DNA of 64,000 nucleotides from Obrimoposthia wandeli (Eukaryota). Shown here piece after piece: positions 3,501 to 60,660 of this stretch. Position 1 is the first letter of the stretch. Each line of letters opens with the position of its first letter. The stretch is from contig CDROCS010001934.1 in the NCBI GenBank assembly GCA_977020255.1, positions 186,001 through 250,000 on the forward strand, read 5' to 3'. Under the pieces are notes generated by a model. That model ran no database searches. It had not been told where the DNA came from and worked only from the letters and a program-made list of their open reading frames with translations. The position numbers were made by a program, and so were the translations under genes.

Positions 3501-4369
3501 AAAAGCTGTTAGTAAAATTGTTAAATAAATTGTAAATAAATTTATAGCTTCTGTTGACTGTTTCGACTGGTCACGCTGGGTGCAGCTAACATGGTTGGGT
3601 GTTACTTAATTTGGTTAAGTGATCAATCCACTGTACTTTGGTCATAGATCGATCTGAGAGAGAATCAGCATCTAATATGTGATCGACCCTTCTCTGACAT
3701 ATCTTTAGAATTAGATCTGATTTTGCGAGAATATTTACTGCGATGTTAGAGATAGCTGTTACTTCGATGAACAGCCAAAAAGACAAAACCGTTTTTCCAA
3801 CGGAAGCTAAAATTCATCTATCTCAAAGATTGTGTGCATTTCTTAATAATTACTAAATTTAATTAAATCTCAAATCATATAATAATAATTGGTGATTCTT
3901 TAATATTTTATTCATCATAATCATAACAGCTAAATTCATCAACTTTAATTCTTTTTCGCAAACTGTACTATTTTCATTCATAATTGGTTATTACATAGTC
4001 TACACAACATTGAACACATACGTGTATGCAACAAAAAAGCGCTTAACAGTGTACAAAGACATATCGGTCTCCCATTGGCACTTTTAAATTTTTTTCCGAT
4101 TTATCAGCAATTTATTAGCAACATACGCCACCTCATGATCAGACCTAATCATAAACCAAAACAACAAACACCAAGACAGATTTCAACAAACTCTCCCGTT
4201 TTAAACTTAGCAACAAACAATAACCCCTAGATTGGGGGCTCTCCTTTAACACTTTAAAACCGTAAGAAAAAAGTTCATATACTATGTCAACTAACACAAA
4301 CAAGATATTGTTATTGTTATATTTTTAAATGGATTATTATTTCCAACTAATTCATTAGCAACAATTTCG

Positions 4370-4600: not shown

Positions 4601-4929
4601 AAAATTGGTCTTAGAAATTATATCAAATCTCTCTATGCCAAACAATTTTATATTAATATTTCTGTCACAAATGACATTATACAAATTTGCAGACACACAC
4701 ACGTAAATCGGCATCATTACACATATAGAGGCAGTAAAATAACAGGTGTGTGTATGTGGTGCATTTAAAATTGGACAGGTAGAAAAATCGATAGAAGATG
4801 CAATAATTCCTTCTGTATTATCTCCTACTTCACGTGAAATTTTCCCACCACGAAACAGAAGATAAAAACTGGCCATCGATATCTTAAAAATATCACTGTT
4901 TGACTGTGGGCACTTCGATAAATTTATTT

Positions 4930-5932
4930 AAATTTAATTCCCAACATTATTACCATCTTCTTCCCTTCAACAACCACTGTGGCAAAATTGGTTTCGCTAA
5001 AAGATAACTTGATAATTCTTCCTAATGTCCATTTTTCAGTCCATTCTTTTTATAGAGTTATTACTATACCATTAAATTTCAATGGCTTCTTATCTTCTAA
5101 CTAATTTTGTCTCACTGCCCACATATACATTATTTCTTCATTCAATGGTTCTATATTTAATATAACAACTACTGAAACAACCTCCGTCTCTGGTATTTTC
5201 TTTCTACCACTATGCTCACAACTTGCTATTCCATTAGTTAATAAAATGTTTGAGTGTCAGGGCTTCTAATTCCTATTCATCAATACTCTTGTAGTAAAAT
5301 GGGCCAGCATTTATTATTTGATTCACTTCAATCAATATGGCCCTGCATAATCTTACTGAATGCGCACAAATGCTTGTGGAAGTTCCTCAATTTGGAGCTT
5401 TGTTAATGGTGCCATTTATTCTTCTATAGATTTGCTTTATATTTTTTATAATGTACACAATATCTTTCTTATTAACTGCCTCACATTTTAGATTCAACAC
5501 ATTTTTGAAGCTTGCTTAATACATATTGAATAGCTGTAAAATGTCAATATTTTTGATAGTCTTATACAATCAATTTACTCAATCACGTTTTCATGATAAT
5601 ACTATGGGAAACTTAGTGTATTGAGATTAAAGCCCGGCTTGGATTATTCGTGTATTTGTCATCAATAACATTTAATCATCTAAAATGGTTCATGCTTCGT
5701 ATTTTACTTATGCTTTATACCGCTTCATTTTTTTGAATATTTTTAATTTCCTCAGCAAAATATTTTAATTTGTCTTCTTTAGTTATATGTTTATTTCCAA
5801 TTAAATATCATCCGACCTTAACTCTCCAGGCTTTCACTATTTAAGATTGAAACGAGTTATTCAGATTTTAATCTGTTTTAACATTTGCAACTCCAATAAC
5901 GTTTTAATCTCAAAACAAATTAAGTTAACACT
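4930..5932 (-). pseudogene. BEL/Pao LTR retrotransposon pol remnant (integrase and C-terminal part)
   Basis: Manual - strand translation gives MAPLTKLQIEELPQAFVRIQxDYAGP...KCW, KFPIVL and WTLGRIIKL, which are BEL/Pao integrase-region motifs. Many stops and frameshifts. Confidence 0.75.
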
Positions 5933-7287: not shown

Positions 7288-7940
7288 AATGGCGCCAAGT
7301 GACCAACTATATTACAGATGTAGCATCTGCGTTTTTCTTTCACATGCCAGTTTCTATAAACATGGCCTTCATCTCCACATCGGAAGCATTTGATTCCTGA
7401 ACTAATTATTCTTTTTATATGATGAGCTGCGACAGCTCCAACTTGGAAGATACCTTCAATTCCAATTTGTTTTGTCATCCTAGTCCGGGCTTCAGCTACA
7501 ACTTGCTCTAAGGAACAGTTTCCACACTTCATCGAAATTTCCAGAGCTTCTGAAGTGTCTGAAGGCAGGCCAGCGACTATCGCCAATTTTACAATGTTAT
7601 CTCCCATACCAATCTTTGATGCCAAACTTTTCAATTCCGACGCAAACCGATCGACTGATTCTCCGAGTTGCCACTTTCTTTGACTGAATCGCTTAAACGC
7701 CTCGAGCTGACCCATCCCACAGGTATCTCTTTATCGCTTCATAATTGATTATGCGTTTTTCTTTTCGTCTACTTCTAAATTCAAAAACATCATTAAGGCT
7801 TCACCTTTCTTTCTCAACGGAATAATTGAACTTAATTTTTTCTCCAGTCCAAGCAGATCGGCCTTCATTTTGATCTCACTAATCCACTCATCCACATTCG
7901 ACGTCCCATCGAAAATGCCGGTGCTCTTCAATTTCTTCAT
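7257..7940 (-). pseudogene. gag: gag (disrupted near 7716-7749), two zinc knuckles
   Basis: ORFs 7749-7940 and 7257-7715; CFRCGDEGH and CYICNIVGHLAPLC. Confidence 0.85.
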
Positions 7941-8052
7941 AGCCGAAATAGCTTTTAGACAAATCGTAAATCCAAGATGGCTTGGAGAAAGATATATTTA
8001 AATTCTGCCGTTTCACGGATTATAGAATATTAAAACAAGACTTCAAACAACA

Positions 8053-8730
8053 ACACTTATTTCAGATATTAAAACTACATCTTCTTTGATTTCATTGTAG
8101 GCATCTGATTTACTAAACCAATTATTTATAGGCCAATTTTTTGATATTTTAACTAAATATTCATGCCCCTTCCATCATTGTTTACTCTCAGCGATTTCTA
8201 CTGCCAACATTCTTCGTAATAGCACATTTTCTTTCACCTCCTGAATGATCGTCACTCGATTTGCTACAAATGGCAAATAATATCTTTTTGGTTATATGAT
8301 CCACAGCAGCACATCTCACTAGCTGACCAGAAAGTTATCTGTTTAATGTATTTACTCATGTGTTTATGAGCACCTGGACTAAATATAAACCTCCACAAGC
8401 TGTCATCAATTCTAATTTTGGAAAACCGATGAAATGTTATGAAATTACACTGTCCTTTTCTACTAACAACAATTCATCAATTTCGTCTAGGTAAATACTT
8501 CTGACATAGCTGTCATATGACGGATCCACAAACACTTCCTACAAATTCTCACATTGTGTAATCCAAGACCGAATTTGTCTCTCCAATAGATAATAACTTC
8601 CTTAATCATTATATCTAACCAAATCCTTTGCATCATAACTTTAAGATGAATTATAAATGTACTTACAAATACCAATGGATCTAAAATAGTGTATAATATA
8701 TTAAAAATTGTAGTCATATTCTGACATTTT
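8053..8730 (-). pseudogene. BEL/Pao pol remnant (RT-RNaseH/peptidase A17 region), upstream half of the element interrupted by the Gypsy insertion
   Basis: Translations include ILDPLVFVSTFIIHLKVMMQRIW (like FDPLG..SP...K..Q.LW), PFVANRVTIIQE and WKGHEYLVKISKNWP. Confidence 0.8.
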
Positions 8731-10761: not shown

Positions 10762-11260
10762 TTTAAGATATTATTTTTTAACAAGTTTTAATTTCTTTTT
10801 GAGTAATTTTAAAAAACTCGTATATATTCTGTGTATTTAAAAAAGCAGTTTCATTTGTAATGATCAAGCTTGATGACAAAAATGCAGTTAAAGATTGAGA
10901 AAAATAAAATTGCCTGATAGAGGTTCTGATGAAGTAAAAGCAGTGAAATATTTGGTGAAGTTAATAATATATATTTACAGTATATTTAATTTATATTAAA
11001 TTTGTTTCTACAAAACATTCGTAACTAGTCTCCGCTACAATTAAATTTCACTAAATCAGCTATACCATATCTTAGCAAAATTGAACTTTGAATGCAAACT
11101 TGATATTGATATTTATCATATCTTTTGAGTACTTCCAAAATTGCATGAATGATTTAAAATATTTGTGTTGGGATTGAAAATGAATTAACAAAATTCAAAT
11201 CAATTCATTTAAATTGACATATAGTTCTGAAGTGCCCACAATCAGGGAGGAAAACAATTT

Positions 11261-11316
11261 CAACCTCCGACGGGGGAAAACCCCGTTCGCCTTGCCAGGC
11301 TCGTCAGGGGGTGGCT
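11261..11316 (-). ncRNA. Hammerhead ribozyme, type I, probably degenerate (GAA instead of GAAA)
   Basis: The - strand reads CCACCCC CTGACGA GCCT GGCA AGGC GAA CGGGG TTTT CCCCC GTC GGAGGTT. Core CUGANGA, a perfect stem II, stem III and a GUC triplet are present. One core A is missing and stem I is imperfect. Confidence 0.7.
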
Positions 11317-12074
11317 CTAAAATGTCAGAGATAAATCTGACAAGATAAAGTGATTTTGACCACCAAGATTCTGTCTTCCCAGCAATATCAACATATGCAA
11401 GATCGGTCTTCCACCTCTCCGGCCAACGACTCATACGGCAGCACTGACCAGCTGACACTGTTCTGGTGGTGCTACTGTCGCAGCGTCGATCCATCGTCTT
11501 CTCTCTCAACCGATTCTCTCCCTTTTCTGTCGAGTTGTTTTTGGAGATTGCAGTTTGATCCAATCTCCCTTTCTCAGGCTGACGACTAACAACTGTGACA
11601 GGGGTGGTAACAGCAACGGCAGCTACTGCACACCCAATCTCTCTCGCGTGTCCCTACTGTCGTCTGTCATTTGTGGTTAGTGACGGTGACTGCATTAGAT
11701 AGCTGCACACTGATCGGTCATATGTGTGCGCCTATCTCTCAATTTTGGGGATAAAGTCGAATCAAACTGACCTATTTTCCCTTTCTGGTTACCTTTGTGT
11801 CTATTCCCTCTACCAAGCCGCCAACTGTGTTCCCCATGTACAGTCTACAAGTCGACAATTCCCATCTGCCCATTCTATATAGTTTACCTAACGCGTATTC
11901 ACTTTCCGTGGCACCCAAACTCTCACTATCTTACCATCTGCAGAAATACTCGCTCAAACACACAGTTTCGCACATGCACACACCGCAGCCTCTTTTCTTT
12001 CGTCTCTGTACTCTCTTTTTCCAGCCATTTCCATCGACACTGTATCGGTGTGTGTGCATGTTGATCGACTGATA

Positions 12075-15906: not shown

Positions 15907-16117
15907 AAACATTTTTAGTTTCGTACTAAATATGTCCATGCCTCAGTCGATAAATAATAAGATCCAAAATTGTAATTATCATTTAAGAAATCTATCAAAA
16001 TCTGTCAATATCTATCGAGAGAAGAGCCGATTATCATTACTCACTCAGTTATTAGTTCAATTTTACACTGCTCACTGCTCTACAACTTGCCAACTAAAGA
16101 TTTGAATTAGGTCCTAA
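15907..16117 (+). repeat. ~210 bp direct repeat, copy 1
   Basis: Near-identical to 17954-18162, with only a handful of differences. Confidence 0.9.
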
Positions 16118-17441: not shown

Positions 17442-17628
17442 ATGTCTTTTAATGTACGAGAATGTATTGTTATGAAGAGGTCCGATTTCGAAGGTTATGG
17501 ATTCAACTTGCATTCCGAAAATGGGAAATTGATCCAGTATATTGGTCATGTGGAGCCTGAATCACCTGCATACACTTCAGGTTTGCTAAAAAATGATGTA
17601 GTAATCGAGGTTAATGGAGCCAATATAA
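17442..17628 (+). CDS. NHERF: NHERF/EBP50/Sip1-like PDZ scaffold, exon 1
   Basis: GYGFNLHSE...YIGHVEPESPAYTSGLLKNDVVIEVNGANI is a NHERF-type PDZ domain. GTGAGA donor at 17629 and a 53-nt intron. Confidence 0.85.
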
Positions 17629-17681
17629 GTGAGACTTTTTTGTATTTAAAGTACTCATTTTAATTCATTTTAATTGATTAG

Positions 17682-17914: not shown

Positions 17915-17953
17915 GTGAGTCACATTTTTCGTTCTACCCATTTTACTAATTGA

Positions 17954-18162
17954 AAACATTTTTAGTTTTGTACTAAATATGTCCATGCCTCAGCCGATAA
18001 ATAATAAGATCCAAATTGTAATTATCATTTAAGAAATCTATCAAAATCTGTCAATATCTATCGAGAGAAGTGCCGATTATCGTTACTCACTCAGTTATTA
18101 GTTCAATTTTACACTGCCCCTGCTCTACAACTTGCCAACTAAACATTTGAATTAGGTCCTAA
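17954..18162 (+). repeat. ~210 bp direct repeat, copy 2
   Basis: Near-identical to 15907-16117. Confidence 0.9.
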
Positions 18163-21184: not shown

Positions 21185-21717
21185 AACACTCTGTATCCCA
21201 AAACACTGACAGCATGGTTTCTTTTCTATGAATTGTCCCCGATCTCATTTTTTGAGGCCTTCTCATTCGCAAATTTTCATTCTGGTAAATACATACTAAG
21301 AGTGGTTTCATCAGTTGTTACAATGTTACTAAATTTTCCTTAAATTGTTCAGAAATTTCTGGAGGTCTTTCTGTTTTTTATCATCAAAGACAAAAGTCTG
21401 GCCATGTTTAAAATACTTAACCCAAATTTTTTTAGTAGCACATGATGGAGAATCATCCTCTTAGGTATCTTGAAACATTTATTTGTTCCAGTTGCATTTA
21501 AATCTTGTAAAACGAAGAACTTGATAACACTTCTGTATTCGACTTGATTTATCATTACTTAGGAGAAATTTGAAAATGTGCGAATAACAAATTAAAAAAA
21601 GAAGTAATTAAAACAAAATAAAAATATGTTTTACCTATATATAGTGATGAAGTTATATAAGAAATTTATGGTTTCTATTTGTTATATTTCTATGTTAGGT
21701 TAGGTACTTATTGAACA
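21185..21717 (-). mobile_element. Internally deleted and truncated copy of the mariner at 36966-38143
   Basis: INQVEYRSVIKFFVLQDLNAT, TDETTLSMY and GTIHRKETMLSVFWDT match the other copy. A TIR-like sequence lies at 21687-21717. Confidence 0.75.
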
Positions 21718-23482
21718 TTCCATGTATGTTGCTAATGATGTCAAACGCATTTCTTTTGTTATCCATCTATTGATTAGTTATGTCATTATGAAATTATTCA
21801 ATTAAATATTTCTAGCAGCCAGCATGGTCGTTGTTTTCTTAGTCTTTTTGCTCAAGCCAGGTCATAGGAGAACAAAATGACACATTTGAAAAGTTTACCT
21901 GCAGTTCAAAAAACTGGATCAATATCTTTTGCATACCATTTAAAAAAGACATTCATAAAAATGTTAAAGAATTTTTCCTTAATCGTTTTCTAAATTTAAT
22001 TGTGCTAACTTTGAGATTTATAATACGATCGAAAATGTTCAACATAGACTTTAGCGGTTTCAATGCAGTACAATCTAAAATGTTCAGGATTAATTTAAAA
22101 GTTCACATGTTAAACATATCAAAACGGTGGAAAATCCTTGAATTAATAAGACGATTTTAAAATAGCTGAAACAATTTCAGGATTTTAAATCACTTTTCTG
22201 AATATTTCCGTAATTTAATCGTGTATCACTACATATATTTGCTTTATCTACTACAATTCTCAATTTGTTTCGAATCACTCTTTGAATGCTCACTTTGCAC
22301 ATTCCACAGATTTCTTTTGCTATTCGGTGTTAAGTCGGCGTTGACAAAATGATAAACACAGTATAAAAGTAATAGGTATTTAAATAATTTCCATTGTTTA
22401 TTTAAAAGACATTCATGAACAACCCGTTAAACTAAATACTTTTATTTAGATATAGATTCACCTTTTATGTCACTCGCTACCTCCAAAACGTTGTTATTAC
22501 AATATCGGCGGAGGTGATAAAATTTAGGGTGATTCTAAAAATAGCCAATTAGCAATTTAGATAGTTAAAATAATTTCAAATTTATACGAAGAAAATTTAC
22601 TTCCATTTAGTTGCTCTACCGGAACTTTGTTAATGTCTGTTGTGCAAAAATATGATTTCGTGGAGCAAAAAAATAATAGAAAAAAACTTATAAAAAATTC
22701 CATTCCAATGGCCTGATTTCCTTTTGTATTTAAAAAAAAACTATTTTTAACACCTTTTAACAAATTTAAAAAAATTTAATATGAGTGTCTAGCCATCTTT
22801 GTTAAGCAGGACTGGTGATGTGGGATGGATTTAAAAAAAAACGTTATTTTAAATCTTGGTATAAAACTAAAGTTAAAAATGTGTGATAATTATTGCGTAA
22901 TGCGGTGTTAATGTTTTGTGGGCGATTTTGAAATGTATCTTTGAGTGATTTCATGAATATTTTCCAGCGAAACAAGACAGGTGGCTGCTGGTTACATTAA
23001 GCCAAAATAGTGAACTTTACCATCTGGCGTCGTAATTTGAACTGAATTATGTATTGAATATTTCTGGTGGAAAATATTTTTACCAGTAGGCATTGGAGAA
23101 AAGACCTAAAACTATAAATATATAACTTCATTACATATCTATTAGGTTATAGTCATAATGTAGCAGACATTATAGGTAAATATAGGAAATGATTTTAGCA
23201 AGTCACGGTCCATTTAACCGCTTTGTTCGAACTTAATTTTGCTTGAAATGGTGCAAAATTAGTCATGTAAACTACTAAAAAATAACATTTTATACATGGG
23301 AAAGAAATTTCAATAAAGTCACTTTCCAAAACGTGAATTTACAAGAAAAAGTAAAGCTGTAGAAGATGCACGAGAAGAGTAAAGTGTTGGTTCTAAAACA
23401 ATAGCACACAAAGAACTAACTCCCCCTATCGCAGTTTTAATCTTTCAAAGGTTCTTGTTTATATTAGGAGGCTAGTAAAAGT

Positions 23483-24156: not shown

Positions 24157-24645
24157 TTATATCAAAAGTAAAATATCAGTTATTATCCAAGTCACATCAA
24201 AGTTATAATCCAAATCCTTGAGACCGAGTATGATCACTTTCCCGCTTGCAAATATGTTGACACATATAGGATTTTGTTTTGAAAACCTCAAAGCAGGAGA
24301 GAACTGAGGTTCGAACATGCATGCGGCTCTACACTTTTGAGACAACTTGTATAGGTTCACCTCTTACCTAAATCGACAGTAACCGTTATTGATTGAATAC
24401 GTCCAATCTTTATTCTAAATGGATACTTGAGCATAGTAGTAGTAATAGGTTTCTTGCAACACATTATCCTGCATGCTCCTAATAATAATAATAATAAACT
24501 AACATAAAAACATACCTGAGCGGAAGATTATAAAGGTATTATCCTTACACCTGTGCACGTACTGACAGGGTTTCCCGGCTTTGAAGGGTAAGTGACTGAT
24601 GTATTCTTTAACTTTACCTTTATAATTAATATTTGCAAGATTCAT
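24157..24645 (-). pseudogene. Divergent TATA-binding-protein-fold gene (two TBP repeats), one intron, one frameshift
   Basis: Exon 1 24645-24516 (MNLANINYKG...TFIIFRSG), GT-AG intron 24515-24479, exon 2 ACRIM...IQSITVTVDLGK-(frameshift near 24362)-VNLYKLS...MFEPQFSPALRF...CVNIFASGKVIILGLK. This parallels the TBP repeats IF.SGK and IQN...D...YEPELFPGL...IF.SGKV..TGAK. Confidence 0.7.
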
Positions 24646-24768
24646 GATTGAATTAATGGAAATAATCCCCCTATATATATAATATTCATGAGCTAAACAT
24701 TAAACAATCAGAATCGAGTATGATGATATATAAGCTACCACTTGTCGTATAGAATTCATTATTTTGAT

Positions 24769-25422
24769 ATGAGCTATAAACAAACTCTCAAGTTTGAGAA
24801 GCCAACATCAAGGCTTGCGGATACAGATGAGGATACAGATGATGATATAGTTTTCATATCAAAACCTAAGAAGCAAACTATGTCAAGCAGCAACAAACAA
24901 TCCAAGACTATCAAGATCGAGAAGCAAGCAACAAATGAGGATCTCTTTATTGATGATATAGTTTCTGCACCCACACACAAGAAACCAATCACTACAAGCA
25001 ACAACAACAATAGTCCAACAGCAGTTGTAATATTAGAGTCTAATGATTTGAAGTTCACCAAGCCGGTTATGTTTTTTAAATGGCAAATGAATTTCTTGAA
25101 GACTCCAATCTCATTTGGATTCATGTTTCCGGTGGCGCTGAATAAGTCAAAATATGATTTCAAGATGCATAGAATCAATCTGTCAGATATTGATGATCTC
25201 AACAAAACTTTCGCGTCGATGCATCTCAACATCATAGTTGGCAATCATATAATCATTCAAGCTGATCATAATCTCTTCAAGCGTGATCATGACTTTAATG
25301 CTGACAAGATGGGAACTGGACTCAAATGGATGATTGTCATTGCGATACACGGCTACAAAATCAACTGTGCAGGTCTTCAGAAACCCATCTGGAAAATTAC
25401 TGATGGACAAGTTCGCTTATGA
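24769..25422 (+). CDS. Intact 217-aa orphan ORF (acidic/low-complexity N-terminus, beta-rich C-terminal domain)
   Basis: Longest uninterrupted non-transposon ORF in the window, ATG at 24769, upstream TATATAA at ~24727, intronless. No family recognised with confidence. Confidence 0.7.
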   Translation: MSYKQTLKFEKPTSRLADTDEDTDDDIVFISKPKKQTMSSSNKQSKTIKIEKQATNEDLFIDDIVSAPTHKKPITTSNNNNSPTAVVILESNDLKFTKPVMFFKWQMNFLKTPISFGFMFPVALNKSKYDFKMHRINLSDIDDLNKTFASMHLNIIVGNHIIIQADHNLFKRDHDFNADKMGTGLKWMIVIAIHGYKINCAGLQKPIWKITDGQVRL

Positions 25423-32710: not shown

Positions 32711-32947
32711 GCGGACGAGCCAATGGCGGCATATGCAGCACCGAGTTATAACGAGCACCGAGTTACAACGAGTTATAACGATCGCGACAACAACTCTGTC
32801 CATTCTGGTGGGGGAAAGCTGAATCTAGCCGACTTGAGTGCCGAAGAGATCAGATCGAGGACTGCTGAATCCGCTGCCAAGAAGAAGGCAAACCGCAAAA
32901 ATCAAATTCCATTCAAGGATCGCGCCCAGCTTTTCCAGCAGCTGTAA
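32711..32947 (+). CDS. NHERF: NHERF-like, terminal exon with EBP50-type ERM-binding C-terminus
   Basis: CAG acceptor, phase 0 (compatible with exon 2), GC-rich. The tail LNLADLSAEEIRSR...KKK...FKDRAQLFQQL* resembles the NHERF1/Sip1 C-terminus. Three exons give a 218-aa protein; additional internal exons are possible. Confidence 0.75.
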   Translation, partial: ADEPMAAYAAPSYNEHRVTTSYNDRDNNSVHSGGGKLNLADLSAEEIRSRTAESAAKKKANRKNQIPFKDRAQLFQQL

Positions 32948-36559: not shown

Positions 36560-36940
36560 AGGACGATTTTAATTAAAAAAAAATGTCAACCTTGCAGATT
36601 TGTAAATTGAACTGCTTTATTGATGATTTCTTCAACAAACATAAAGAAAAATTCTAATGGCGTTGTTAGGTTGACTCCACGATTGATTCTAGGAATAATA
36701 TGCATGGTATTTATATTGTGTTGTCTTCCCCGATACCGCCATGACCACAGAACAAGGAGAAAGACTTCGTACTTTATTTCCACTACTGTCATCGTCGCCA
36801 TCTGGAATTTTCTGCATTTGGTCGTCTTCTAATCATTCATTGTTTGACTCATTTCCTTTATATTTTACTATTATTTCCTTTTCATCATATTCACTGGCAT
36901 TATTTGCAAATATTAATTTGTCAAATGGTTTGCATTAGTG
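36560..36940 (-). pseudogene. piggyBac-like transposase N-terminal remnant
   Basis: An acidic N-terminus is followed by TTPLEFFFMFVEEIINKAVQFTNLQG (like TP...F.LF...I..IV..TN). Confidence 0.6.
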
Positions 36941-36965
36941 TCAATAAAAGTCTATTTACGTGGTA

Positions 36966-38143
36966 CATTCAATAAGTCCCTAGCCTACCATAGAAAAATG
37001 ATAGATACAATCCTTAATTTTTTCATATAACTACATAATTATATATAGGTAAAAGCTATATACTTTATTTGAATGTGTTACTTTTGTTTATATTTTTAGT
37101 GGCACATTTTCAAATTTATTATAAATCAAGTGAAATACCGGAGTGTTATCAAGTTTTTTGTTTTGCAAGGACTAAACGCAACTGAAATAAATAAAATGCT
37201 TGAAAACGTAGGTCAAGTATTTGAAAAATGGTCGCACTCCTGTGTTTTATGATGAAAGAACGGGAAGACCTCAAGAGATTCCAGATCAAGTTAAGGAAAA
37301 ATTAATTATAATCGTGAATGATGAACGTAGAATCTCTTTTAAAATGCTTTCCATTCGTCTTAATATCATTGTGGGAAGCCTTCACACAATGGTGAAATAT
37401 ATGGGTATTCAAAAACTGAGTTCAAGATTTTTGCCCAGGTTTTTCACTGGTGAAATGAGGAATCGTCGATTGGAGTGCTGTGATGAAAATTTGCAACTTT
37501 ATAAACAGTGGGGTGACCGTTTCCTAAGTAACATTGTAACAACTGATGAAAAAACTCTTTCTATGTACTTGCTCGAATGTCATCATGAATCCACGGAATG
37601 AAAGTTTCCAAATGAGAAGCCCTTAAACAAAATGAGATCGGGAACAATCCATGGAAAAGAAACAATGCTGACAGTGTTTTGGGATACAAAGGGTGTTATA
37701 AAACTTAATTTCACTGAGAAAGGCACTATCAATGCAGCATACTACAGTAATCTTGTAACAACTACTAGACAGAACACACGCAAAGCACAAAACACACCTT
37801 CATGGCTATTGCAGGATAATGCTCCAGTGCACACTACAAACCTCACAGACCCTATAGCTCAGACGTTGCACCTAGTGACTTCTACATGTTTCGGTATCTT
37901 AAGAAGCATATGAGAGTAGACAGCAGAGATGATTTGATCAACAATGTTCGAGATTTTTTCAATAAATGTGAGCCTGGTTTCTTTGAAAAGGCTTTTCGGG
38001 AGCTAATCATCCGCTGGAAAAAAATGTGTTGACAAAAATGGATCATATGACAATAAAAAGACTATATAGTTACATGTTATTGAAAAATAAAAATATATTT
38101 GGTTACTTTCTTTTTTCTATGGTAGGCTGGGACTTATTGAATG
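36966..38143 (+). mobile_element. Near-full-length mariner (DD34D-like) with ~30 bp TIRs and a disrupted transposase
   Basis: TA + CATTCAATAAGTCCC(T)AGCCTACCATAGAAAAA, with its inverse at ~38113-38143. Motifs YRSVIKFF, IVTTDEKT, MLTVFWD and LLQDNAPVHT. Frameshifts and stops present. Confidence 0.9.
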
Positions 38144-39844
38144 TGTGTGGTTTATTATTAATTTATTATTTTTCTTAAGCATACATATTTTCTATCAACA
38201 TTTTAATATTATTTACTTTAATATTATCGCTTAAAATGTTGATGTCTAGAAAGGGATGAAATGAAGTTATGAAATATTTAATACATTTATTATATTTACA
38301 GTCTTTTCCAAAGACAAATTAAAATTAAAAAAATAAAATATTAACCCATAAAATTACATTGGAGAGGTTTTTTAACTTTATTCTGGTGAAATTCAGTTTA
38401 TAAATGTATTTAAATAGACTATATTATAGTTGCAAAGTTGCAGTAAGTCTATAAGAAACCCGACCTATTTGTGGTCGTAAAATGGATGTTCAACAATCGT
38501 AGTTGGTTCTTTGTAACTTAAGGAACTCTGTAAGTTGCCAAAAATATTTCATTGAGGATAGAAGGCGTTACTTTCCGTTTTGAAATGAAAATCAGGAAAA
38601 GCCCTTCCTAAAGACCTACCCACACTTAATATCCAAAAACTCACGTTTTAAAAGCCTACTTACTAGGTGTAAAAACTCTAACCCAACCAATATTGTTATA
38701 GTGCTTTGTACAAATTATTTTTCTTAATACTTCAAAGTATTATAAATTTATTTTGATTTCTAATAGTGAATCTATAGACACATAAAGATTTTTTTGCAAA
38801 TAATTTTCAGTTAATGTTTTGTTGGAAACCTTCTTTTGAAGTTATTAAATTAACCTGAAGTTTTATTATTTGCTCTAACCGCTTCTTTTATTACACAGTT
38901 TCTTTTTGTGCTTTATTTAATTTTAGCGAGTGTATGTAACTCTCATAATTCTACATTATATTTATATAAGTGTGTACGTAAATATTTGTTTGTACTTTGA
39001 TTGAATGAAACGCATATGGACGAACCGAGTAGTTAAGCATATGACTGTTGAATTATTATTTTACAAATATTATCAATAAGTATAAGTTCTAAATTTTATA
39101 TATTAAAACACAATTATTATTTCACCTTCTCAAACGTTTCAAATGATTTTTAATTGACTTATATAATTTTCAAAATGTTTGTATTGCTTAAATGAAAATT
39201 GTCCAACCCACGGATTAAGACAGCTAGAAATCATCAACAGTAAACCTCTATTTTTTAATATTTTTATTATAGGAATAAATTGAATTATGTTAAATAATTT
39301 TAATAATTTCTATAAGTTTAAATCCTTTCGTTATCGAGTATCACATACTATACCATATAATTAATACACTATGGTTATATAACTTTTAAAAATGTGAAGA
39401 AATTTTAGGCAGATGTAAAGGTCTATTAATATTTATTCAAATAATAATCAACAATAACGATCCATAATATGTTTAAGTTTAAAATTTATTGCATAAATTT
39501 TCCACTAATGTTTCTATTTATAGCAATTGTGTGTTGTCTGCAACAGGAGCGAGGGAGAGAAACATCAGGGAAACTGTTGTACCGCGATCCACTGAAGAGA
39601 TAAGAGATAACTGGTTAGCAAAGAAAATGTCCAGGACAGGGATAATTTCTGCTTATAAGGATAAAATTAACAATACCCTCAACAATCGAGAGTGCATGAG
39701 CAGGGAGAATGAGTGAGTGAGTATGGCTGTGAGTTTGAGTTAAAATAAAAGGAGTGAGCAATGAGACGAGTGGGTGTAAAGTTTGCTATGAGTGTGTGTG
39801 TTGCGATTTCAGTCTGCATGCGTGTGATTCAATTTGCACATTAA

Positions 39845-39947
39845 TACCATGTGTCGACGACTTTCGCCGGCACATGGTAGATAGGAAAATCAATTCTTTT
39901 ATCTCTGACTTCGCGGGCATTTTGCCCACCGCGTAGCCAGAGATAAA
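39845..39947 (+). other. Two strong stem-loops immediately upstream of the hammerhead
   Basis: TACCATGTGTCG/CGGCACATGGTA (39845-39879), and TTTATCTCTG/CAGAGATAAA (39898-39947) enclosing GGGCA/TGCCC. Confidence 0.75.
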
Positions 39948-39950
39948 CTG

Positions 39951-40004
39951 CAGTCCCCCTGATGAGCCCGATAGGGCGAAACCGGTTAAACCGGTCGGGG
40001 ACTG
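39951..40004 (+). ncRNA. Type I hammerhead ribozyme with intact consensus
   Basis: CAGTCCCC CTGATGA GCCC GATA GGGC GAAA CCGGT TAA ACCGG TC GGGGACTG: 8-bp stem I, 4-bp stem II, 6-bp stem III, full CUGAUGA/GAAA core. Cleavage is predicted after C39996. Confidence 0.95.
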
Positions 40005-40257
40005 ATAAGGATTATTAAAAATGCCAAAGTGCATTCGTCAATTAATTTTTAATAAAGATTTACTTAATACTTATTTTCACAAAATTTCTTAATAAAATTA
40101 AAACATTTCAAAATCATTCCCAACACAGATACTATGGTTTTATAAATAATCTTATTGTTTTAATGTATTTTACTTTTTTTATCGTTTTCTTTTGTTTCGT
40201 GCCATTTCAAAATTTTGAATGAATATTGACTTTTTTCAATAGTAAGTTTAGTACATA

Positions 40258-40999
40258 TGTTGGGGTTTCTAATTGAAACTCTTAGATCCTCGTTTGGAGG
40301 CCTCCAACGTGAGTTCTGTAGGTTTAGGGCTTAGAAATGTTTGTGGCCTACCTATTTTTATCTTACTTAATTCGAGTCTCAAATCTGAAGGTTTTCGTTT
40401 TATGTTTTGTAGTTGGTGTGATGTGTAGTGAGTTGTGTGCAATATAACTGGGAAGGCCATAAAACTAATGTAGTGGGATGTAGGTCTGGAATAATGAGGA
40501 TTTTATTTTACAGAAAATCTGGTTTGAAACCTATACCAAATGGATGGCAAAGAGCCTGAGCCAAATGACGATGACGATGTTCCCCAGGTAATATTGGGAC
40601 ACAACAATCCTCTAATATCCCAGTGCTTGAAACACTGTCAAGTGGTTGTCCCTCGGGCGACCTACATGTTAGAGGTGCCTACGTCTATGTGGGTGGTGAT
40701 TAATAAATCAATTAGTCGGTATTTAAGAAAACAATTTATTTATAAAAATCAACTAAAATGGTTTCACTACTTTACACAAGTAGGAACGTTCTTAACTAAC
40801 TACATCACTTACAACATTCAAACTGGAGATGACACTACACAGTAACAATTTTATGCATTACGTCTTCACAATTCGATTAAAAACTTTTAAACAATTAATT
40901 CACAAAATCGATTATAACTTTTACATAATTAATTTCACAAAACGATTATAAACCTTTACACAATTAATTCACAAAATCGATTATAAATTTGTGCACAAT
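40258..40999 (-). mobile_element. LTR-like repeat, copy A, with ~33 bp tandem array (40865-40999)
   Basis: Starts TGTTGGGGTTTCTA and is homologous to the copies at 1-593, 41000 and 59920. The ACAATTAATTCACAAAATCGATTATAA unit occurs about 4 times. Confidence 0.7.
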
Positions 41000-43605
41000 T
41001 GTTGGGGTTTCTATATGAAATGCTTTCGATTCAGATATATTCTCGGATGGAGGCCCCCAACGTGAGTTCTATAGAAGTAGGGCTTGCAGTTGTTTGTGGC
41101 TTACTTAGAATGTGCTTATCTGTCTCAATGTATAATCTAAAGGTTTGTTTTTATTTGTTTTTGTAGAGATGTGTGAAAAGCTGTGTATACGGCACTGAAA
41201 AAATTCCCCTAGTGTGGTGTAATGTATGGAGTATCTGGTATCTGCTTGAACTCAAATATTTGTTCAAACAACGTTGTTTAAATTGTAGGAAAACTTTATT
41301 ATTGAAAACATACTAATTTACGTTTCTAAAAATAACAACAACTAATCCTAACTTCGCTTCTCTAAACCTCACACAAATGGAGATGTCTTACGTATCGATT
41401 TTATAAATTCTTTTGTGAAACGTTTACTTCTTCTTATGATTTTATCGTACAAAATGTGGAGCGATTTTAAGGACAACTTCTTTTAACTTTATCGTAAAAA
41501 TATGGACGATTTTAATTCAAAGCTTTACTTTCTTTTTACGATTTTATCGTACAAAATTTGGGCGATTTTAAAGTCAACTTCTTTTGATTTTATGAATAAA
41601 ATATTGGCCATTCAATTGAAACTTTAATATGAGACACTTTTGATTTAATTTTATCAATCTTCAAATTTATCAATACTGCTGAACTCAACACGTTTTCAAA
41701 ACACTACACTCGGCACTGCGCACTTCTCACCAGTAATTTTCACTCGAACTTGGCTGCTCGGTTTCTGGGGTCTCAGATCAGTGTTTTCAAGAGATATTGC
41801 TCGGACTCCGGTTCTCTGATCCGTTCCGGTTTGTTTGCTGATCGTAGCGGTTCGAGAGATGAACTGTGTCGTGTCGCCTTTCTCATTTCTCCGATTTTCT
41901 GAGCAAAGTTAGCTGTATTGCAATTTTCTCCAATTTTTGGTTACTTTTCACTCATCGATGACTCATATCCTTTGTTCTCCTAAAGTACACATGACTCATC
42001 ACCTGACCTCATGAGGTAACATGAGGTCAAGGTCATGTTAATGTCAAATTTCTTCGAGTACACCTGATTTTTAAAGGTCATTTGAGGTCATTTTAAGGAC
42101 AGATTTCTCTCAAGTACATCTCATTTTTCAAGGTCAAGGTCATGTGATGTAGGTCAAATTTCTCTCGAGTATACCTGTTTTACAAGGTAATTTCAAGATC
42201 ATGAGTTATATACTTTATTTTATTATACTCATCACTTGAGCTCAAGGTTATTATAAGTTCATGAGCTCATATGCTTACTATGAGCTCAAGGTTATGATGT
42301 TCTTTTACTCATCTCATGAGCCCAAGGTTATTATTATATGATCATGATACCATGTGCCCACCATGAGCCCACCATGAGCCCAAGGTTATCATAAGGTTAG
42401 CAGGCTATCAAGGTTCATAGGTGCTCACTATGAAAGACAGATATCCAATCACATCATCTAAAAGAATTATTGATCGAATATAGATTGACGATTATTCAAA
42501 TAATGTTTGAAAAACACAATAGAAGGACAACAATCAATAGATATTAACAACATATATATTGAAAATAAATTAATAAAAACTTACCTGAGATACTGTAGCA
42601 GAATATAAATATAAATAAATAAAAAAAATCCATCCAGCGGCAGAGTGATGCGATTCCTGCATCAACTGATGGCATTAACCGCACACATACTCCAATTCAA
42701 GACAGATTTTATCTGCCTTGTATTGGAGTGTTAAGTAGGGAAGATAAAATCACACACTCACACAGATGTGATAAAAATGTCACATGACTATGTGAGTGTG
42801 TGATTTACAAATAATTGCACTTGTTTGCAACATTTGTACACGTGATGTGCTTTGTCCTTTGTGAATTATTTCCTTTCACATGTTGAGGACATTTCATGGT
42901 TACTCACATGGTTACTCACTCTTGATGGATTTTCTTTGAGGTGCTTATTTGAGCTGCTTCTTTTAAGGAAGTTATTTGAGTTGCATCTTTTTAGGAAGTT
43001 TTTTGAGTTGCTTCTTTTAAGGAAGTTATTTGAGTTGCTTCTTTTAAGGAAGTTATTTGAGTTGTTTCTTTTAAGAAAGTTATTTGAGTTGCATCTTTTT
43101 AGGAAGTTTATTGAGTTGCTTCTTTTAAGGAAGTTATTTGAGTTGTTTCTTTTAAGGAAGTTATTTGAGTTTCATCTTTTAAGGAAGTTAATTGAGTTGT
43201 TTCTTTTAAGGAAGTTATTTGAGTTGCATCTTTTAAGGAAGTTATTTGAGTTGCTTCCTTTAAGGTACTTCTTTTTGCTGATTCTTCAATTTGCTACTTT
43301 GAGCTGATTATTTATTATGGTTATTCGAATAGGGTTCTCTCAAAGGGTCTAAAACCTTCCAGAGTGAACACTCAAGGGTCCAAACCTTCAAAAATTTTAT
43401 TTTTCTACTTTTCAAAGTTACATATAATAGCATTGATCTGACTTTGATTAGATCTTCGAGGGTGCACCTTCAAGGGTCAAAAACCTTCAAAAAATTTATA
43501 ATTTATGTCATGTCTTTGTTCAAGGAGTCATCGATGAGTCACCTAAAAAGTAGAACAAATACATTTTGTCCTCAGCAGGGGGGTTTTTGTGCCAGAAGTG
43601 CCGCA
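41000..43605 (-). mobile_element. LTR-like repeat, copy B, possibly one ~2.6 kb LTR with several internal tandem arrays
   Basis: Spans TGTTGGGG (41000) to GTGCCAGAAGTGCCGCA (43605). The latter is the inverse of the TGTGGCACTTCTGGCACAAA starts at 57747 and 62456, and all three follow purine-rich tracts. That the span is a single element is inferred. Confidence 0.45.
42945..43265. repeat. 27-bp minisatellite, about 12 copies (TTATTTGAGTTGCTTCTTTTAAGGAAG)
   Basis: Directly visible. It explains the LFELLLLRK repeat ORF at 42852-43307. Confidence 0.95.
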
Positions 43606-52400: not shown

Positions 52401-54434
52401 CAAGGGTTTAAAGGGATATTATGCATCTCAGAACTCGGTCGTGGCGTTCAATCTGACACTGGCAGTACTGGGAAATGGGAGAAAATGGGAAAATAAATAT
52501 TTTGTTAAAAAGTTTAAAAAAGAGTAGGTAAAAAAGTAAATAAAATAAGATTAAATCTTTGAAGACTAAGTCTGACTTTTAATCTCAATTACATTTTAAA
52601 ATGACTTTTAATTTAAAATATACTTTTAGTAAATTTATTTTAACGGTTAATAACAAATTCAATTAAAAGTGTATAAAAGGGAAAAGCGGGTAAGATACCC
52701 ATTAACTAGCGCATCAAAAATAAGTAAATAAGACACAAATGATTACATATTAATTAAAAAGTCAGCCTCCATTCAAAGAATCAAATAGCGCTATACACAA
52801 CAATCCGTTGCAATATGAATTCACTTTATAAACATCTCAACTTATCAAAAAACATAAATCATTATCTCATATAATACGATAGTGAAACACTTTAAAAATC
52901 TTATAATAAATCATGCTGTAGCAATTGAAATGTGTCTCTCTAAAATTGCGGTAGAGAGTAATTCGATATTTGGAAAAACTCAAATAGAACAATAAAGATT
53001 TATTGTGGTTCAAATTTAGGCTGTATTTTCAAATAATACAATAAAGAAACGAGTCATGAATTTTTGATTCTTTAGACGTAGTTCCAAATTTATCTACACG
53101 CCATTTTCAATCGTTTTACTGTACTGACTTTGTTGAGACAGCTTAAGATGGAGCCATGGGACAAAATTAACCAGCCTTGCACTCATCAAGATATGTCGAA
53201 ACGCACAAAATATTGGGTAGTCAAAAATATCTGTTTGAGTTATTCATCGGAAAACAGAAAATGTTTGCAAGTATACAATTTCTAATAAAAAACGTATTAG
53301 GTTTTTATATAAAATATAAGGGGCCATGATTATAAAACTATTTAATTAATATTAATTAATTTAACAATGAAATAATTACATCTGGGTAACTCTGATAATT
53401 ACAATTAGTTAAAATACCTGTAAAAGTGAGAAATTATGTACTGAACTTGCAAAAAATAATTTTCTTTAAATGTTTTTAAACAGTTGAATTTTTAAAAAAT
53501 TATTTATAAATGTAAATTATATATTTTTTTCATATATGTAACATTAATAATTTTGATGCTTTTGAACTATTTCGAAATTGAAAATTAACATTTATGTCAT
53601 CTATTTATTTAACGACTATTACAACTTTTTAAAGTGTTTATTGTTAAAATTATTCAAATAGAACATTATTTTTATCCTCTTTAAAATTTTAATTTTAAAT
53701 AATTTAAATAAGCATATAATTTGAAATGTTACAAACTTAAGACAAGATTTTGATCATTGTTTAAAACTTATTTTCCAAACCAAACAAGGCATTCGGTACT
53801 CAATTATTGTCTAATCCTGTACATAACAGATTTCATTCCTATATTTTTGCTGTCTCATTCATTTTACTAAGATTCCCTCTTTTTAGTCAGCGACTTTCAA
53901 GGCTCTTAATTAGGAATGTTTATGAATTATTAATTTTTACATACAAGTTACGTGATTAGCTGACTTTAATGAGATATAGGGCTTTATCTCACACAGCAAA
54001 CATAACAAAAATCCTTGTCACAAAAGTTTGGGAGACGAGTGATTGAAAAAGGAATTAACTTGTTTTAGCCAATCAGATCAAGAGATTTTAATCTTCGCTA
54101 TTTCTGGTTATGGGGAGATTTGAAAGGACAAGTCTGTAAACATAAAATCTATGAGCTAAAAACTGTTATTCAAATATAATTACACACCATAAATTACCCT
54201 CTTATATTCTCTCGAAGGTTTTTCATCCTGTTATTGTTCTAAAGTTAATTTTTGCAAAATATCCATACTCTAAAATAAACTTTTATATTTCAATATTTAT
54301 TCTATATTATAACTATGTTTTTAAAAAAATATTTTATTATCGTTATTTTCACTTTTAGAATTAGTTCAGATCTTTAGTTGTCACCCGTTCCATACGGGAA
54401 TAAGTTCATTTATTATATTCGATTGCCATTACAG

Positions 54435-54634
54435 ATTGCTCCGGAGTACCTGGGTTATCTGATTCTAGCTGCGATTGGGGTTGTATTCATCCTCTTCTTC
54501 ACCCTCGTGGCGAGTATCTGCTTCTGCAAGTGTAGCTGCTGTAAGTCAAGGAATCCGCCTCCATTGAACAAGAACAAGAAGACCAAGCGCCACGTCCTCA
54601 ACTGCTTCGTGTTTATCTTCACCTCCTTCATGAT
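54435..54634 (+). CDS. PROM: Prominin-like, exon 3 (TM1, Cys-rich loop, TM2)
   Basis: EYLGYLILAAIGVVFILFFTLVASICFCKCSCC...HVLNCFVFIFTSFM parallels prominin YE.G...C..LG.LF...MPL.G.FFC.CRCC. TACAG acceptor and GTAAGA donor. Confidence 0.75.
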
Positions 54635-55224
54635 GTAAGAGTCCGGCTCTTCAACTAGGAATAATAAAGGCTTAGTATAACTAATATTTCCAAGTAATTT
54701 GAGGCACATCATTGAAATAGAGTAACTATCGATCGTAATTGGTCATACGAATTGTTCTCTGTTATGTGCTAACTATCTTTCTTTCAGGAATTAATCATTT
54801 GATGGGGATTGCGTAAGGTACACAATAATGCCCTTTAACTTCTCTTCAAACCTTACCGACCTCATTGGCAGCTTTTTCATCTATTTTCTTCTTCTAAAGT
54901 TTCACAACATTGATTGGCTATAATCGCATTTTTACTTTGACTTAAATGTTTCCTTGTTTGATAACAAGATTTACTCTGTAGTATCAACGATATAACTTCA
55001 TTTTTAACGTCTTTCATTTAATGAATGATGGATAAATAATATATTTCTAAATCTATAATTTTAATGATTTTAATGTGAAATGATTTAATTAACTGTGTTG
55101 TTAGGACCAGTCATAGTTTTTTGTAAATTTCACTCAAGTCTGTGATTTTTGATAGAGAAGATTCCTCTATCAGCAGTAGAATTACCGTCACATGATAGTT
55201 GTGACAGCCATAATTATCATGCAG

Positions 55225-59763: not shown

Positions 59764-59919
59764 TGTATATTTTTAATATATTAATGATTTTGTAATCGGA
59801 TGACTCACATTGAAAAATTAACACTTTTGCAAAGGTGTTACAAATATATGCTTAACCTTTGGTTACAGAAGCCATTTAGAGATGAGTCAAGTTGTGTTTT
59901 AAATGTTTTATCAAATATG

Positions 59920-60660
59920 TGTTGTGGTTTCTATTTGAAAATCTTAAATAGATCCTCGTATGGAGGCCCCTAACGTGAGTTCTATAGCAATAGGGCTTGC
60001 AGTTGTTCGTGGCCTATTTAGATGTCCTTACTTGTCTCAATTTCTAATCTGAAGGTTCTGTTTTATTATGTGTGTTGTGGAGATGTGTGAAGAGTTGTGT
60101 ACACGGGGACTGGAAAATTTCCCTTAGTGTGGTGTTATGTATGGAGATTATGTTGGTTCTGACCTAATTGCAAGGGTTTCTTCAAGACAACACTATTTAA
60201 TGTAGGAAATCTTTATTTTATCAAATTTAATCTAACTAGGTTCCTAAAAATGGTAACGATTAGTCCTATCCAATTCACTAAACTTTACACAAATGGGGAT
60301 GTCCTGCCGTACCAATTTTGATCGTACCTCATAGTGTTACAAGCTTCTCAATCAAAATCGATGTATGCTTTATTTTATAAAATAAATGTAGGCTTTATTT
60401 GATCAATCTTTACTTTAATAAAAAATCTTTACTTTATAAAAATCAATCAATGTAGGCTTTATTCTATCAAGCTCTATTTTATCAAATTCAATTTAGGCTT
60501 TTTTAAGCTTTATTTTATCAAAATCAATCTAGGCTTTATTTTGTCAATCTTTACTTTATCAAAATCAAATCAATTTAGGCTTTATTTTATCAAATTCAAT
60601 TTAGTCTTTATTTTATCAATCTTTACTTATCAAAATCAAATCAATGTAGGCATTAATCGA
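59920..60660 (-). mobile_element. LTR-like repeat, copy C, with an AT-rich tandem array (60340-60640)
   Basis: TGTTGTGGTTTCTA...GGAGGCCCCTAACGTGAGTTCTATAG is homologous to copies A and B. CTTTATTTTATCAAAATCAA units are repeated. Confidence 0.7.

What the first reader, a model, noticed from the sequence alone, without database searches (positions are those of the whole stretch)
39951..40004. Perfect type I hammerhead ribozyme in intergenic DNA
All core nucleotides and all three helices are intact and GC-rich against an AT-rich background, which implies recent insertion or selection. Stem I can possibly extend (GATAA/TTATT) across an internal loop that could dock with the GAUA loop II, as in fast natural HHRs. 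Known: type I HHRs mark Penelope-like elements and non-autonomous retrozymes that produce circular RNAs in animals. No adjacent RT ORF or tandem partner is visible.
Basis: partly seen in the sequence, partly recalled or inferred. Interest (0 to 1): 0.78.

Follow-up and report, generated by a model that had tools for sequence, protein, structure and literature searches.

The report
Intact hammerhead ribozyme in decayed repeat
The 54 bases are a genuine, fully intact self-cleaving hammerhead RNA motif; it is the one surviving ribozyme among four old copies of a roughly 250-base interspersed repeat in this window, a known kind of genomic passenger with an unusual helix layout for an animal genome.

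Summary
Window 39951-40004 (+) has every conserved hammerhead core base. Helix I is 8 bp, helix II is 4 bp with loop GAUA, and helix III is 6 bp with loop UAA. The topology is type I and the predicted cut follows C39996. Rfam Hammerhead_1 scores it 32.8 bits, against a gathering score of 34. The default scan therefore misses it, mainly because helix III is long. The hammerhead fold is the minimum-energy fold in every context tried.

It is not an orphan. Three more diverged copies of the same ~250-nt unit lie in the window: B at 11.3 kb (-), C at 4.8 kb (+) and D at 3.7 kb (+). B's ribozyme is decayed, D's is heavily decayed, and C lacks the module. Helices II and III of A and B differ by paired changes, so the ribozyme was once under selection in this family.

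No RT or GIY-YIG ORF, tandem partner or flanking repeat is present. The helix layout fits neither animal retrozyme hammerheads nor Penelope minimal hammerheads. It resembles bacterial or phage type I motifs.

Best reading: a solo copy of a hammerhead-bearing non-autonomous retroelement module. Membership of Penelope-like elements or retrozymes is unproven.

The parts
39951..40004 (+). Copy A: intact type I hammerhead ribozyme. Helix I is 39951-39958 / 39997-40004, core 39959-39965, helix II 39966-39977, GAA 39978-39980, helix III 39981-39995. The predicted cut follows C39996.
39898..39947 (+). Hairpin module just 5' of the ribozyme (19-nt arms, 89% complementary).
39845..39879 (+). Second strong hairpin further 5' (16-nt arms). 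No counterpart was found in the other copies.
39874..40131 (+). Approximate extent of repeat unit A: hairpin module, hammerhead, a box related to the TGAYTGTGGGCAYTTC box of B, C and D, an AT-rich stretch, and the 3' landmark TCCCAACA at 40118-40125.
39520..40005 (+). GC-richer, G-skewed block (35-58% GC) that ends exactly with the ribozyme. The part before 39874 does not align with the other copies. It may be a variable 5' part of the element or unrelated host sequence.
11160..11347 (-). Copy B of the unit, with a decayed hammerhead-like module at 11261-11315. The core departs once from the hammerhead consensus (a length change) and helix I has mispairs. Rfam does not detect it and it does not fold as a hammerhead. 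Helices II and III differ from A by paired changes.
4791..4947 (+). Copy C of the unit. The hairpin module, downstream box and TCCCAACA landmark are present. The hammerhead module is absent (one gap of about 50 nt relative to A).
3690..3875 (+). Copy D of the unit. It aligns with A over 39898-40047 and with B over 11347-11203. The hammerhead module is heavily decayed by many substitutions.

Best explanation
The 54 nt are a genuine type I hammerhead ribozyme. It is the only intact one among at least four diverged copies of a ~250-nt interspersed repeat unit in this window. The unit is most likely the ribozyme-bearing terminal module of a non-autonomous retroelement, of the class that includes Penelope pLTR fragments and solo retrozyme monomers. 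Here it sits as a single dispersed copy in gene-poor, AT-rich DNA of an animal genome.

Mechanism, inferred from established hammerhead chemistry: if the + strand is transcribed, the helix II and III hairpins form first and helix I closes last. The RNA then cuts itself between C39996 and G39997. The upstream piece ends in a 2',3'-cyclic phosphate. The downstream piece begins with a 5'-OH at G39997.

With six pairs in helix III it should act as a monomer, unlike the dimer-dependent minimal motifs of animal Penelope elements. As a lone copy it can only sever a read-through transcript. It cannot release a unit-length or circular RNA.

Shown here: the motif, its fold, the repeat family and the state of each copy. 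Inferred: catalysis, transcription, the retroelement nature and the partner enzyme.
For: - Motif and fold.
- More than chance.
- Repeat family: single-sequence nhmmer queries with each of the four units hit only the other units in the whole window. The modules are in the same order and orientation. Three of the four TCCCAACA sites in the window lie about 30-120 nt downstream of the hammerhead module or its place in A, B and C, on the matching strand.
- Past selection on the ribozyme: one pair of helix II, and most of helix III, differ between A and B yet still pair.
- Upstream sequences next to the units do not align. That pattern fits 5'-variable or truncated copies sharing a 3' module, as described for Penelope-type elements and their non-autonomous derivatives (PMC8557442).
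- Most Penelope-associated hammerheads occur as single, widespread motifs (PMC4209133). Solo retrozyme monomers are scattered evenly along chromosomes (bioRxiv 10.64898/2026.07.22.740005).
- The flanks are AT-rich, like Penelope target sites (PMC11167929).
Against: - No RT, GIY-YIG, pLTR-type repeat or tandem partner was found in 64 kb.
- The helix layout fits neither the canonical animal type I motif (helix I 6 bp with loop 1, helix III 1-2 bp) nor the Penelope minimal motif (helix II 7-8 bp, no helix III) (PMC4209133, PMC7229834). Here helix I is 8 uninterrupted pairs, loop 2 has 4 nt and helix III has 6 pairs.
- No conserved stem-loop forms around the AC-rich 3' landmark.
- The family rests on short, 66-81% identical blocks in four copies only.
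- No relative of the unit was found outside the window.
- Transcription and cleavage are untested.
Confidence: 0.58

Rival explanations
1. Exapted host ribozyme. Copy A was retained by selection at this locus after the repeat family died. It cuts a host transcript in cis, for example an upstream exon or intron of the same-strand prominin-like gene whose exon lies at 54378-54638, or an unannotated non-coding RNA.
For: A is flawless (49 of 54 positions constrained, none broken). Sibling copies that share 66-81% identity in neighbouring blocks have lost the ribozyme. The GC-richer block upstream holds a short ATG-started ORF and splice-donor-like GTGAGT repeats. Solitary conserved intronic hammerheads are known in amniotes (own knowledge; Rfam families HH9 and HH10).
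Against: No host transcript is known to cover the site. The nearest recognisable exons are 7 kb upstream and 14 kb downstream. Divergence between copies may reflect old subfamilies and not the age of insertion A. No orthologous locus could be fetched.
Confidence: 0.15
2. A hammerhead-bearing short interspersed element of another kind. It would not be Penelope-dependent: for example a SINE-like unit in the manner of Schistosoma Sm-alpha, or a satellite-derived unit carried by a different retrotransposition machinery or by DNA-level duplication.
For: The unit size of about 250 nt and its dispersed single copies. No Penelope protein remnant was found anywhere in the window. The hammerhead layout is unlike Penelope motifs (PMC4209133).
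Against: No Pol III B-box-like site lies near any copy; the pattern scan gave 6 hits against 8.8 expected, none at the units (the box pattern is from my own knowledge). No poly(A) or simple-repeat tail is evident at the 3' landmark. Three of the four copies lie within 8 kb of each other, which could also mean local duplication.
Confidence: 0.2
3. A chance match, an assembly contaminant, or DNA acquired from a phage or bacterium.
For: A relaxed descriptor gives 0.1 chance hits per 64 kb, and 3 of 7814 simulated windows reach 18 helix pairs. The motif shares a 28-nt identical run with a type I hammerhead on a phage-like metagenome contig (L001). It has the same stem II as one on an IMG/VR contig (L002).
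Against: A related decayed copy and two further unit copies lie in the same window, embedded in host-like AT-rich DNA. No phage or bacterial protein signal was found in the blocks. The exact 24-mer is absent from 185,579 prokaryotic species genomes and from IMG/VR. Most of the shared run is invariant core plus a G-C stem, which can recur by convergence.
Confidence: 0.03

Closest known systems
Non-LTR retrozymes of animals (type I hammerhead repeats giving small circRNAs; PMC7229834; solo monomers in bioRxiv 10.64898/2026.07.22.740005)
   Same: Type I hammerhead. A non-coding unit of a few hundred nt (about 250 here; 170-400 described). Low-GC surroundings and an intergenic, dispersed location. 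Helix II of 4 bp. Solo monomers are a described category.
   Different: No tandem array or second ribozyme in 64 kb. Helix III is 6 bp instead of 1-2 bp. Helix I is 8 uninterrupted pairs with no loop 1. Loop 2 has 4 nt. No circular RNA can arise from a single site.
Hammerheads of Penelope-like elements (pLTR / 3'-terminal motifs; PMC4209133, PMC8557442, PMC11167929)
   Same: Type I topology. Most copies are single and widespread, thought to be truncated elements. Copies share a 3' module while their upstream parts differ. Insertion sites are AT-rich. An AC-rich landmark lies about 100-130 nt past the cut site, roughly where the Anolis element starts reverse transcription.
   Different: No RT/GIY-YIG ORF and no pLTR repeats. 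Animal Penelope motifs are minimal (helix II 7-8 bp, helix I 4-5 bp, helix III absent or tiny) and work as dimers. This one has a long helix III and should work alone. No stem-loop forms at the AC-rich landmark.
Type I hammerheads with a large helix III, of bacteria, phages and fungal/protist Penelope elements (PMC4209133); examples met here are L001 and L002
   Same: A long, stable helix III. A short G-C helix II. No recognisable loop-loop contact. The stem II sequence is identical, and L001 shares a 28-nt identical run.
   Different: Those sit between ORFs on compact phage-like contigs, or in telomere-associated elements of fungi and protists. This one sits in an interspersed repeat of an animal genome. 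The likeness is probably convergent.
Schistosoma Sm-alpha SINE-like hammerhead repeat (own knowledge; it underlies the Rfam Hammerhead_1 consensus)
   Same: A short non-coding interspersed unit carrying a type I hammerhead. It matches the full length of the Rfam model built largely on such motifs.
   Different: No Pol III box was found. Loop 2 is shorter by two bases and helix III is longer by seven, which is why the score falls below the gathering score.

Membership tests
Hammerhead ribozyme (motif) | Conserved core: C3 U4 G5 A6 N7 G8 A9, G12 A13 A14, the A15.1-U16.1 pair, and H17 before the cut | tested here: met
   All are present; the cut-site triplet is GUC.
Hammerhead ribozyme (motif) | Three helices around the core, with helix I open (type I) | tested here: met
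   8, 4 and 6 pairs. The minimum-energy fold equals the hammerhead fold, with pair probabilities 0.8-1.0.
Hammerhead ribozyme (motif) | Rfam RF00163 gathering score (34 bits) | tested here: not met
   32.8 bits, E 1.5e-6 in the local scan. It is missed by the gathering scan. The shortfall comes from an 11-nt insert against 4 nt in helix III, and a shorter loop 2.
Hammerhead ribozyme (motif) | Loop 1 / loop 2 tertiary contact of fast natural motifs | tested here: inconclusive
Helix I has no internal loop within 8 pairs. Three-dimensional docking is not testable here.
Hammerhead ribozyme (motif) | Self-cleavage | not testable with these tools
   No expression or biochemical data are available.
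Non-LTR retrozyme | Tandem repeats of 150-450 bp, each with a hammerhead | tested here: not met
   Only one hammerhead core in 64 kb, and no tandem array at the site. A hinted 350-nt periodicity was not significant.
Non-LTR retrozyme | Canonical animal type I layout (helix I about 6 bp plus loop 1, helix II 4 bp, helix III 1-2 bp) | tested here: not met
   Helix II fits; helices I and III do not (against PMC4209133 and PMC7229834).
Non-LTR retrozyme | Expressed as circular RNA of unit length | not testable with these tools
   No RNA data. A single cut site cannot give a circle.
Penelope-like element | ORF with RT and GIY-YIG endonuclease | tested here: not met
   Pfam scans covered ORFs of 45 aa or more within 6-7 kb of A, most ORFs of 48 aa or more at 8.1-15.5 kb around B, and nearly all ORFs of 62 aa or more in the rest of the window. 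No RVT or GIY-YIG match.
Penelope-like element | pLTRs (direct or inverted partial copies flanking the unit) | tested here: not met
   No repeat of the 39.5-40.1 kb block within the window other than the diverged units B, C and D.
Penelope-like element | 5'-truncated or non-autonomous copies that share the 3' end carrying the hammerhead | tested here: inconclusive
   Four copies share a ~250-nt module. Their upstream parts do not align. Four copies are too few to define the ends.
Sm-alpha-like SINE | Internal Pol III promoter boxes | tested here: not met
   No B-box-like site at any copy. The pattern is from my own knowledge, and the A box was not scanned.
Exapted solitary hammerhead (HH9/HH10 type) | Conservation at the orthologous locus across species | not testable with these tools
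   No related genome could be reached.

The most novel reading that the evidence does not exclude
An animal genome keeps a monomer-competent hammerhead of the bacterial/phage layout (long helix III, no loop-loop contact). It survives at one locus under host selection, after its carrier repeat family decayed, and acts as a cis-cleaving switch on a host transcript, possibly that of the neighbouring prominin-like gene.
Probability: 0.12. Interest if true: 0.65.

Novelty: new variant of a known kind. Interest (0 to 1): 0.4.

Why it matters
Hammerheads in animal genomes are usually catalogued with descriptors or Rfam cut-offs tuned to short-helix-III motifs. This one is missed by the Rfam gathering score. 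If its family is abundant, a whole class of monomer-active hammerhead repeats may be under-counted in invertebrate genomes.

The four copies also give a small natural series: intact, lightly decayed, heavily decayed and deleted. The paired changes among them document past selection on the ribozyme. Otherwise the finding fits the known picture of hammerheads riding on non-autonomous retroelements.

Tried and rejected
1. Rfam gathering scan of the window: nothing. The motif appears only with the E-value threshold.
2. Relatives elsewhere:
   - The exact 24-mer (core plus stem II) gave 0 hits in IMG/VR and 0 in the prokaryotic species genomes.
   - It gave one phage-like metagenome contig, L001. 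A looser pattern gave one IMG/VR contig, L002. I read both as convergent phage hammerheads.
   - The sequence was not found in papers or their supplements.
3. Paralogous copies via spurious ORFs: the reverse-strand 82-aa ORF over the ribozyme has no exact record and no homologue.
4. Host identification:
   - Word searches with a 224-aa ORF and the PDZ exon gave nothing.
   - Exact look-ups of three ORFs gave nothing.
   - The host is therefore only inferred to be an animal, from prominin, NHERF-like PDZ, mariner and Pao-type hits.
5. A 350-nt periodicity hinted by a short direct repeat was not significant.
6. Long-range homology of the GC-richer upstream blocks of A and B: none.
7. A stem-loop at the AC-rich 3' landmark, by analogy with the Anolis Penelope element: not supported.
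8. Phage origin of the blocks: no PHROGs hit.
9. A covariance model of the family was not built. MAFFT misaligned the 3' halves, and I build no consensus of the element.
Exons of the NHERF-like and prominin-like genes were searched one by one by reference, and the joined step was left out.

Full report
**Observation**

The sequence at 39951-40004 (+) reads as a complete type I hammerhead.
- An 8-bp helix I is open at its outer end.
- The CUGAUGA core box follows.
- Helix II has four G-C pairs capped by GAUA.
- After the GAA box, helix III has six pairs (it starts with the A15.1-U16.1 pair) capped by UAA.
- The GUC triplet ends at C39996.

Rfam's Hammerhead_1 model matches over its full length at 32.8 bits (E 1.5e-6 for the 351-nt scan). 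The gathering score is 34, so the standard whole-window scan reports nothing. The alignment shows why: helix III holds 11 inserted bases where the model expects 4, and loop 2 is two bases short.

The thermodynamic fold of the 76-nt stretch is the hammerhead fold (-30.3 kcal/mol, z -4.3). All three helices keep pair probabilities of 0.8-1.0 when 91, 136 or 221 nt of native context are folded, and in a 501-nt fold.

**Chance**

The core boxes with their closing pairs are expected 0.01 times per window. My relaxed type I descriptor gives 0.10 hits per simulated 64-kb window, so loose hammerhead look-alikes are not rare. Only 3 of 7814 simulated windows reached 18 helix pairs, and those were lopsided. 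The stronger argument is that the motif has relatives in the same window.

**A repeat family**

A sensitive self-comparison found a hammerhead-like stretch on the minus strand at 11261-11315 (copy B). An 18-base pattern taken from the shared core and stem II matches only A and B, with none expected.
- B is not detected by Rfam even at E 10, and it does not fold as a hammerhead.
- B's core departs once from the consensus (a length change) and helix I has mispairs.
- One pair of helix II, and most of helix III, differ between A and B while still pairing in each. This is the signature of past selection for the structure.

The hairpin just upstream of A (39898-39947) recurs at 4818-4866 (copy C). 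C in turn shares with B a box of about 16 nt downstream of where the ribozyme would be (z 5.5), but it has no ribozyme module.

A fourth copy, D (about 3690-3875), aligns with B over 145 nt and with A over 150 nt including the whole ribozyme region, which in D is heavily decayed.

Single-sequence nhmmer queries with each unit against the whole window return only the other units at E below 5. The four-way alignment shows the same module order in all copies. Three of the four TCCCAACA sites in the window lie about 30-120 nt downstream of the hammerhead module (or its place) in A, B and C, on the matching strand. The upstream hairpin keeps its pairing in A, C and D, with two compensatory pairs.

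The unit is about 240-260 nt (A: roughly 39874-40131). Identity between copies in the shared blocks is 66-81%. Sequences further upstream do not align.

**Surroundings**

The window is 29% GC, has no tRNA or Rfam gene and has few ORFs. Pfam recognises:
- a PDZ exon of NHERF type at 17442-17663 (+);
- a TBP-like fragment at 24157-24360 (-);
- a prominin-like exon at 54378-54638 (+);
- a mariner transposase remnant at 37632-37913 (+);
- a zinc-knuckle gag ORF at 7257-7715 (-), with a faint Pao-peptidase hit nearby.

The host is therefore an animal; I could not name it. Copy A lies 7 kb past the last recognisable upstream exon and 14 kb before the prominin-like exon.

No RT or GIY-YIG match was found. 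The scans covered ORFs of 45 aa or more within about 6-7 kb of A, most ORFs of 48 aa or more around B, and nearly all ORFs of 62 aa or more elsewhere in the window. No PHROGs match was found either.

A sits at the 3' edge of a GC-richer, G-skewed block (39520-40005, 43% GC before the ribozyme). GC drops to 20% right after the ribozyme. B sits the same way at the end of a 47% GC block.

The cut site and the type are right. The proposed outer stem (GAUAA with UUAUU) forms only if the 5' arm of the upstream hairpin is removed. With native context its probability is zero, because those bases belong to a much stronger hairpin that is transcribed first. Helix I runs eight pairs without an internal loop. 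The canonical loop 1 / loop 2 contact of animal type I motifs is therefore not evident.

**Comparison with known systems**

Cervera and de la Pena (PMC4209133) describe two layouts.
- Canonical animal type I motifs have helix I of 6 bp and helix II of 4 bp, which touch through their loops, and a helix III of 1-2 bp.
- Penelope motifs of animals are minimal, with helix II of 7-8 bp, helix I of 4-5 bp and no helix III. They work weakly and as dimers.

The same paper notes that fungal and protist Penelope elements carry type I variants 'similar to bacterial motifs', with a large helix III and no recognisable tertiary contacts. Copy A fits that last layout.

The only outside matches I found are type I hammerheads between ORFs on a phage-like metagenome contig (L001: 28 identical bases in a run; Rfam 26.2 bits) and on an IMG/VR contig (L002: same stem II, similar stem I, 5-bp helix III). 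Most of the shared run is invariant core plus G-C pairs, and the 24-mer is absent from 185,579 prokaryotic genomes. I therefore read this as convergence, not transfer.

Animal retrozymes are tandem arrays of 150-450 bp units (PMC7229834). Solo monomers exist and are spread evenly along chromosomes, and retrozymes appear to derive from Penelope pLTRs (bioRxiv 10.64898/2026.07.22.740005). Penelope copies are typically 5'-truncated, carry the hammerhead near the 3' end, and insert into AT-rich DNA (PMC8557442, PMC11167929).

The family here has the dispersed, 3'-module-sharing, AT-flanked pattern. It shows none of the defining protein or repeat features within 64 kb.

**Explanation**

The best reading (about 0.6) is a solo copy of a hammerhead-bearing non-autonomous retroelement module. 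When transcribed on the + strand it would cut itself after C39996 as a monomer and sever the transcript. It could not yield unit-length or circular RNA.

Why is A flawless when its siblings are decayed? Either A is a young copy from a lineage in which the ribozyme was kept by selection for the element's own cycle, or the host keeps it (about 0.15). The window cannot separate these. A different carrier type, SINE-like or other, has about 0.2. Chance or contamination is nearly excluded.

**Rule-related remarks**

I built no consensus of the family and give only counts for the decayed copies. One possible slip: notebook entry 2 spells out how the core of copy B departs from the consensus. It stands undeleted.

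No contig looked human. The large representative protein search was not used.

Noticed in passing
window 5931-8717: Remnant of an LTR-type retrotransposon on the minus strand. It has an open 152-aa gag-like ORF with a zinc knuckle (7257-7715) and a faint Pao-peptidase hit (8487-8717). The pol-like region is broken by several stops and frame changes (not counted exactly). It is bracketed by 91-nt direct repeats that are 99% identical (5931-6021 and 7952-8042). It lies between unit copies C and B.
   Followed up: partly
window 36586-37913 (+) and 21186-21908: A mariner-type transposase remnant (Transposase_1, E 1.3e-10 at 37632-37913). A second copy in inverted orientation lies about 15 kb away (inverted repeats of 74-89%).
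   Followed up: partly
window 17442-17663 (+), 32723-32947 (+): A PDZ exon of NHERF type (GYGFNLH motif). The possible C-terminal exon of the same gene is assigned from memory of the family only. A ~230-nt stretch next to the PDZ exon is duplicated 2046 nt away (15892-16117 and 17939-18162, 90-98%).
   Followed up: partly
window 24157-24360 (-): An isolated TBP-like fragment (Pfam TBP, E 3e-6), next to a 226-aa ORF with no family match (24742-25422). It could be a pseudogene piece or a TBP-related factor exon.
   Followed up: no
window 54378-54638 (+): A prominin-like exon (Pfam Prominin positions 90-154, E 1.3e-6, below the gathering score). Earlier exons of this gene would lie between it and the hammerhead, on the same strand.
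   Followed up: no
window 40244-40356, 40986-41109, 59906-60022: Another short interspersed repeat, with three copies at 70-88% identity. It starts 240 nt downstream of the hammerhead and is unrelated to the hammerhead unit.
   Followed up: no
window 42945-43265; 4444-4591; 40865-41000: Tandem arrays: 27-nt period with 12 copies, 44-nt period with 3 copies (just upstream of unit copy C), and 35-nt period with 4 copies.
   Followed up: no
L001 623-671 (-); L002 4519-4566 (+): Type I hammerheads with a long helix III, sitting between ORFs on a phage-like metagenome contig and on an IMG/VR contig. Both have the same GCCC/GGGC stem II as the window motif. L001 also has the same GAUA loop.
   Followed up: partly
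window 39563-39576 vs 39951-39964: A 14-nt stretch 374 nt upstream is 86% complementary to helix I 5' strand plus the first core bases, so it could be a competing pairing. It does not displace the hammerhead in the 501-nt fold.
   Followed up: partly
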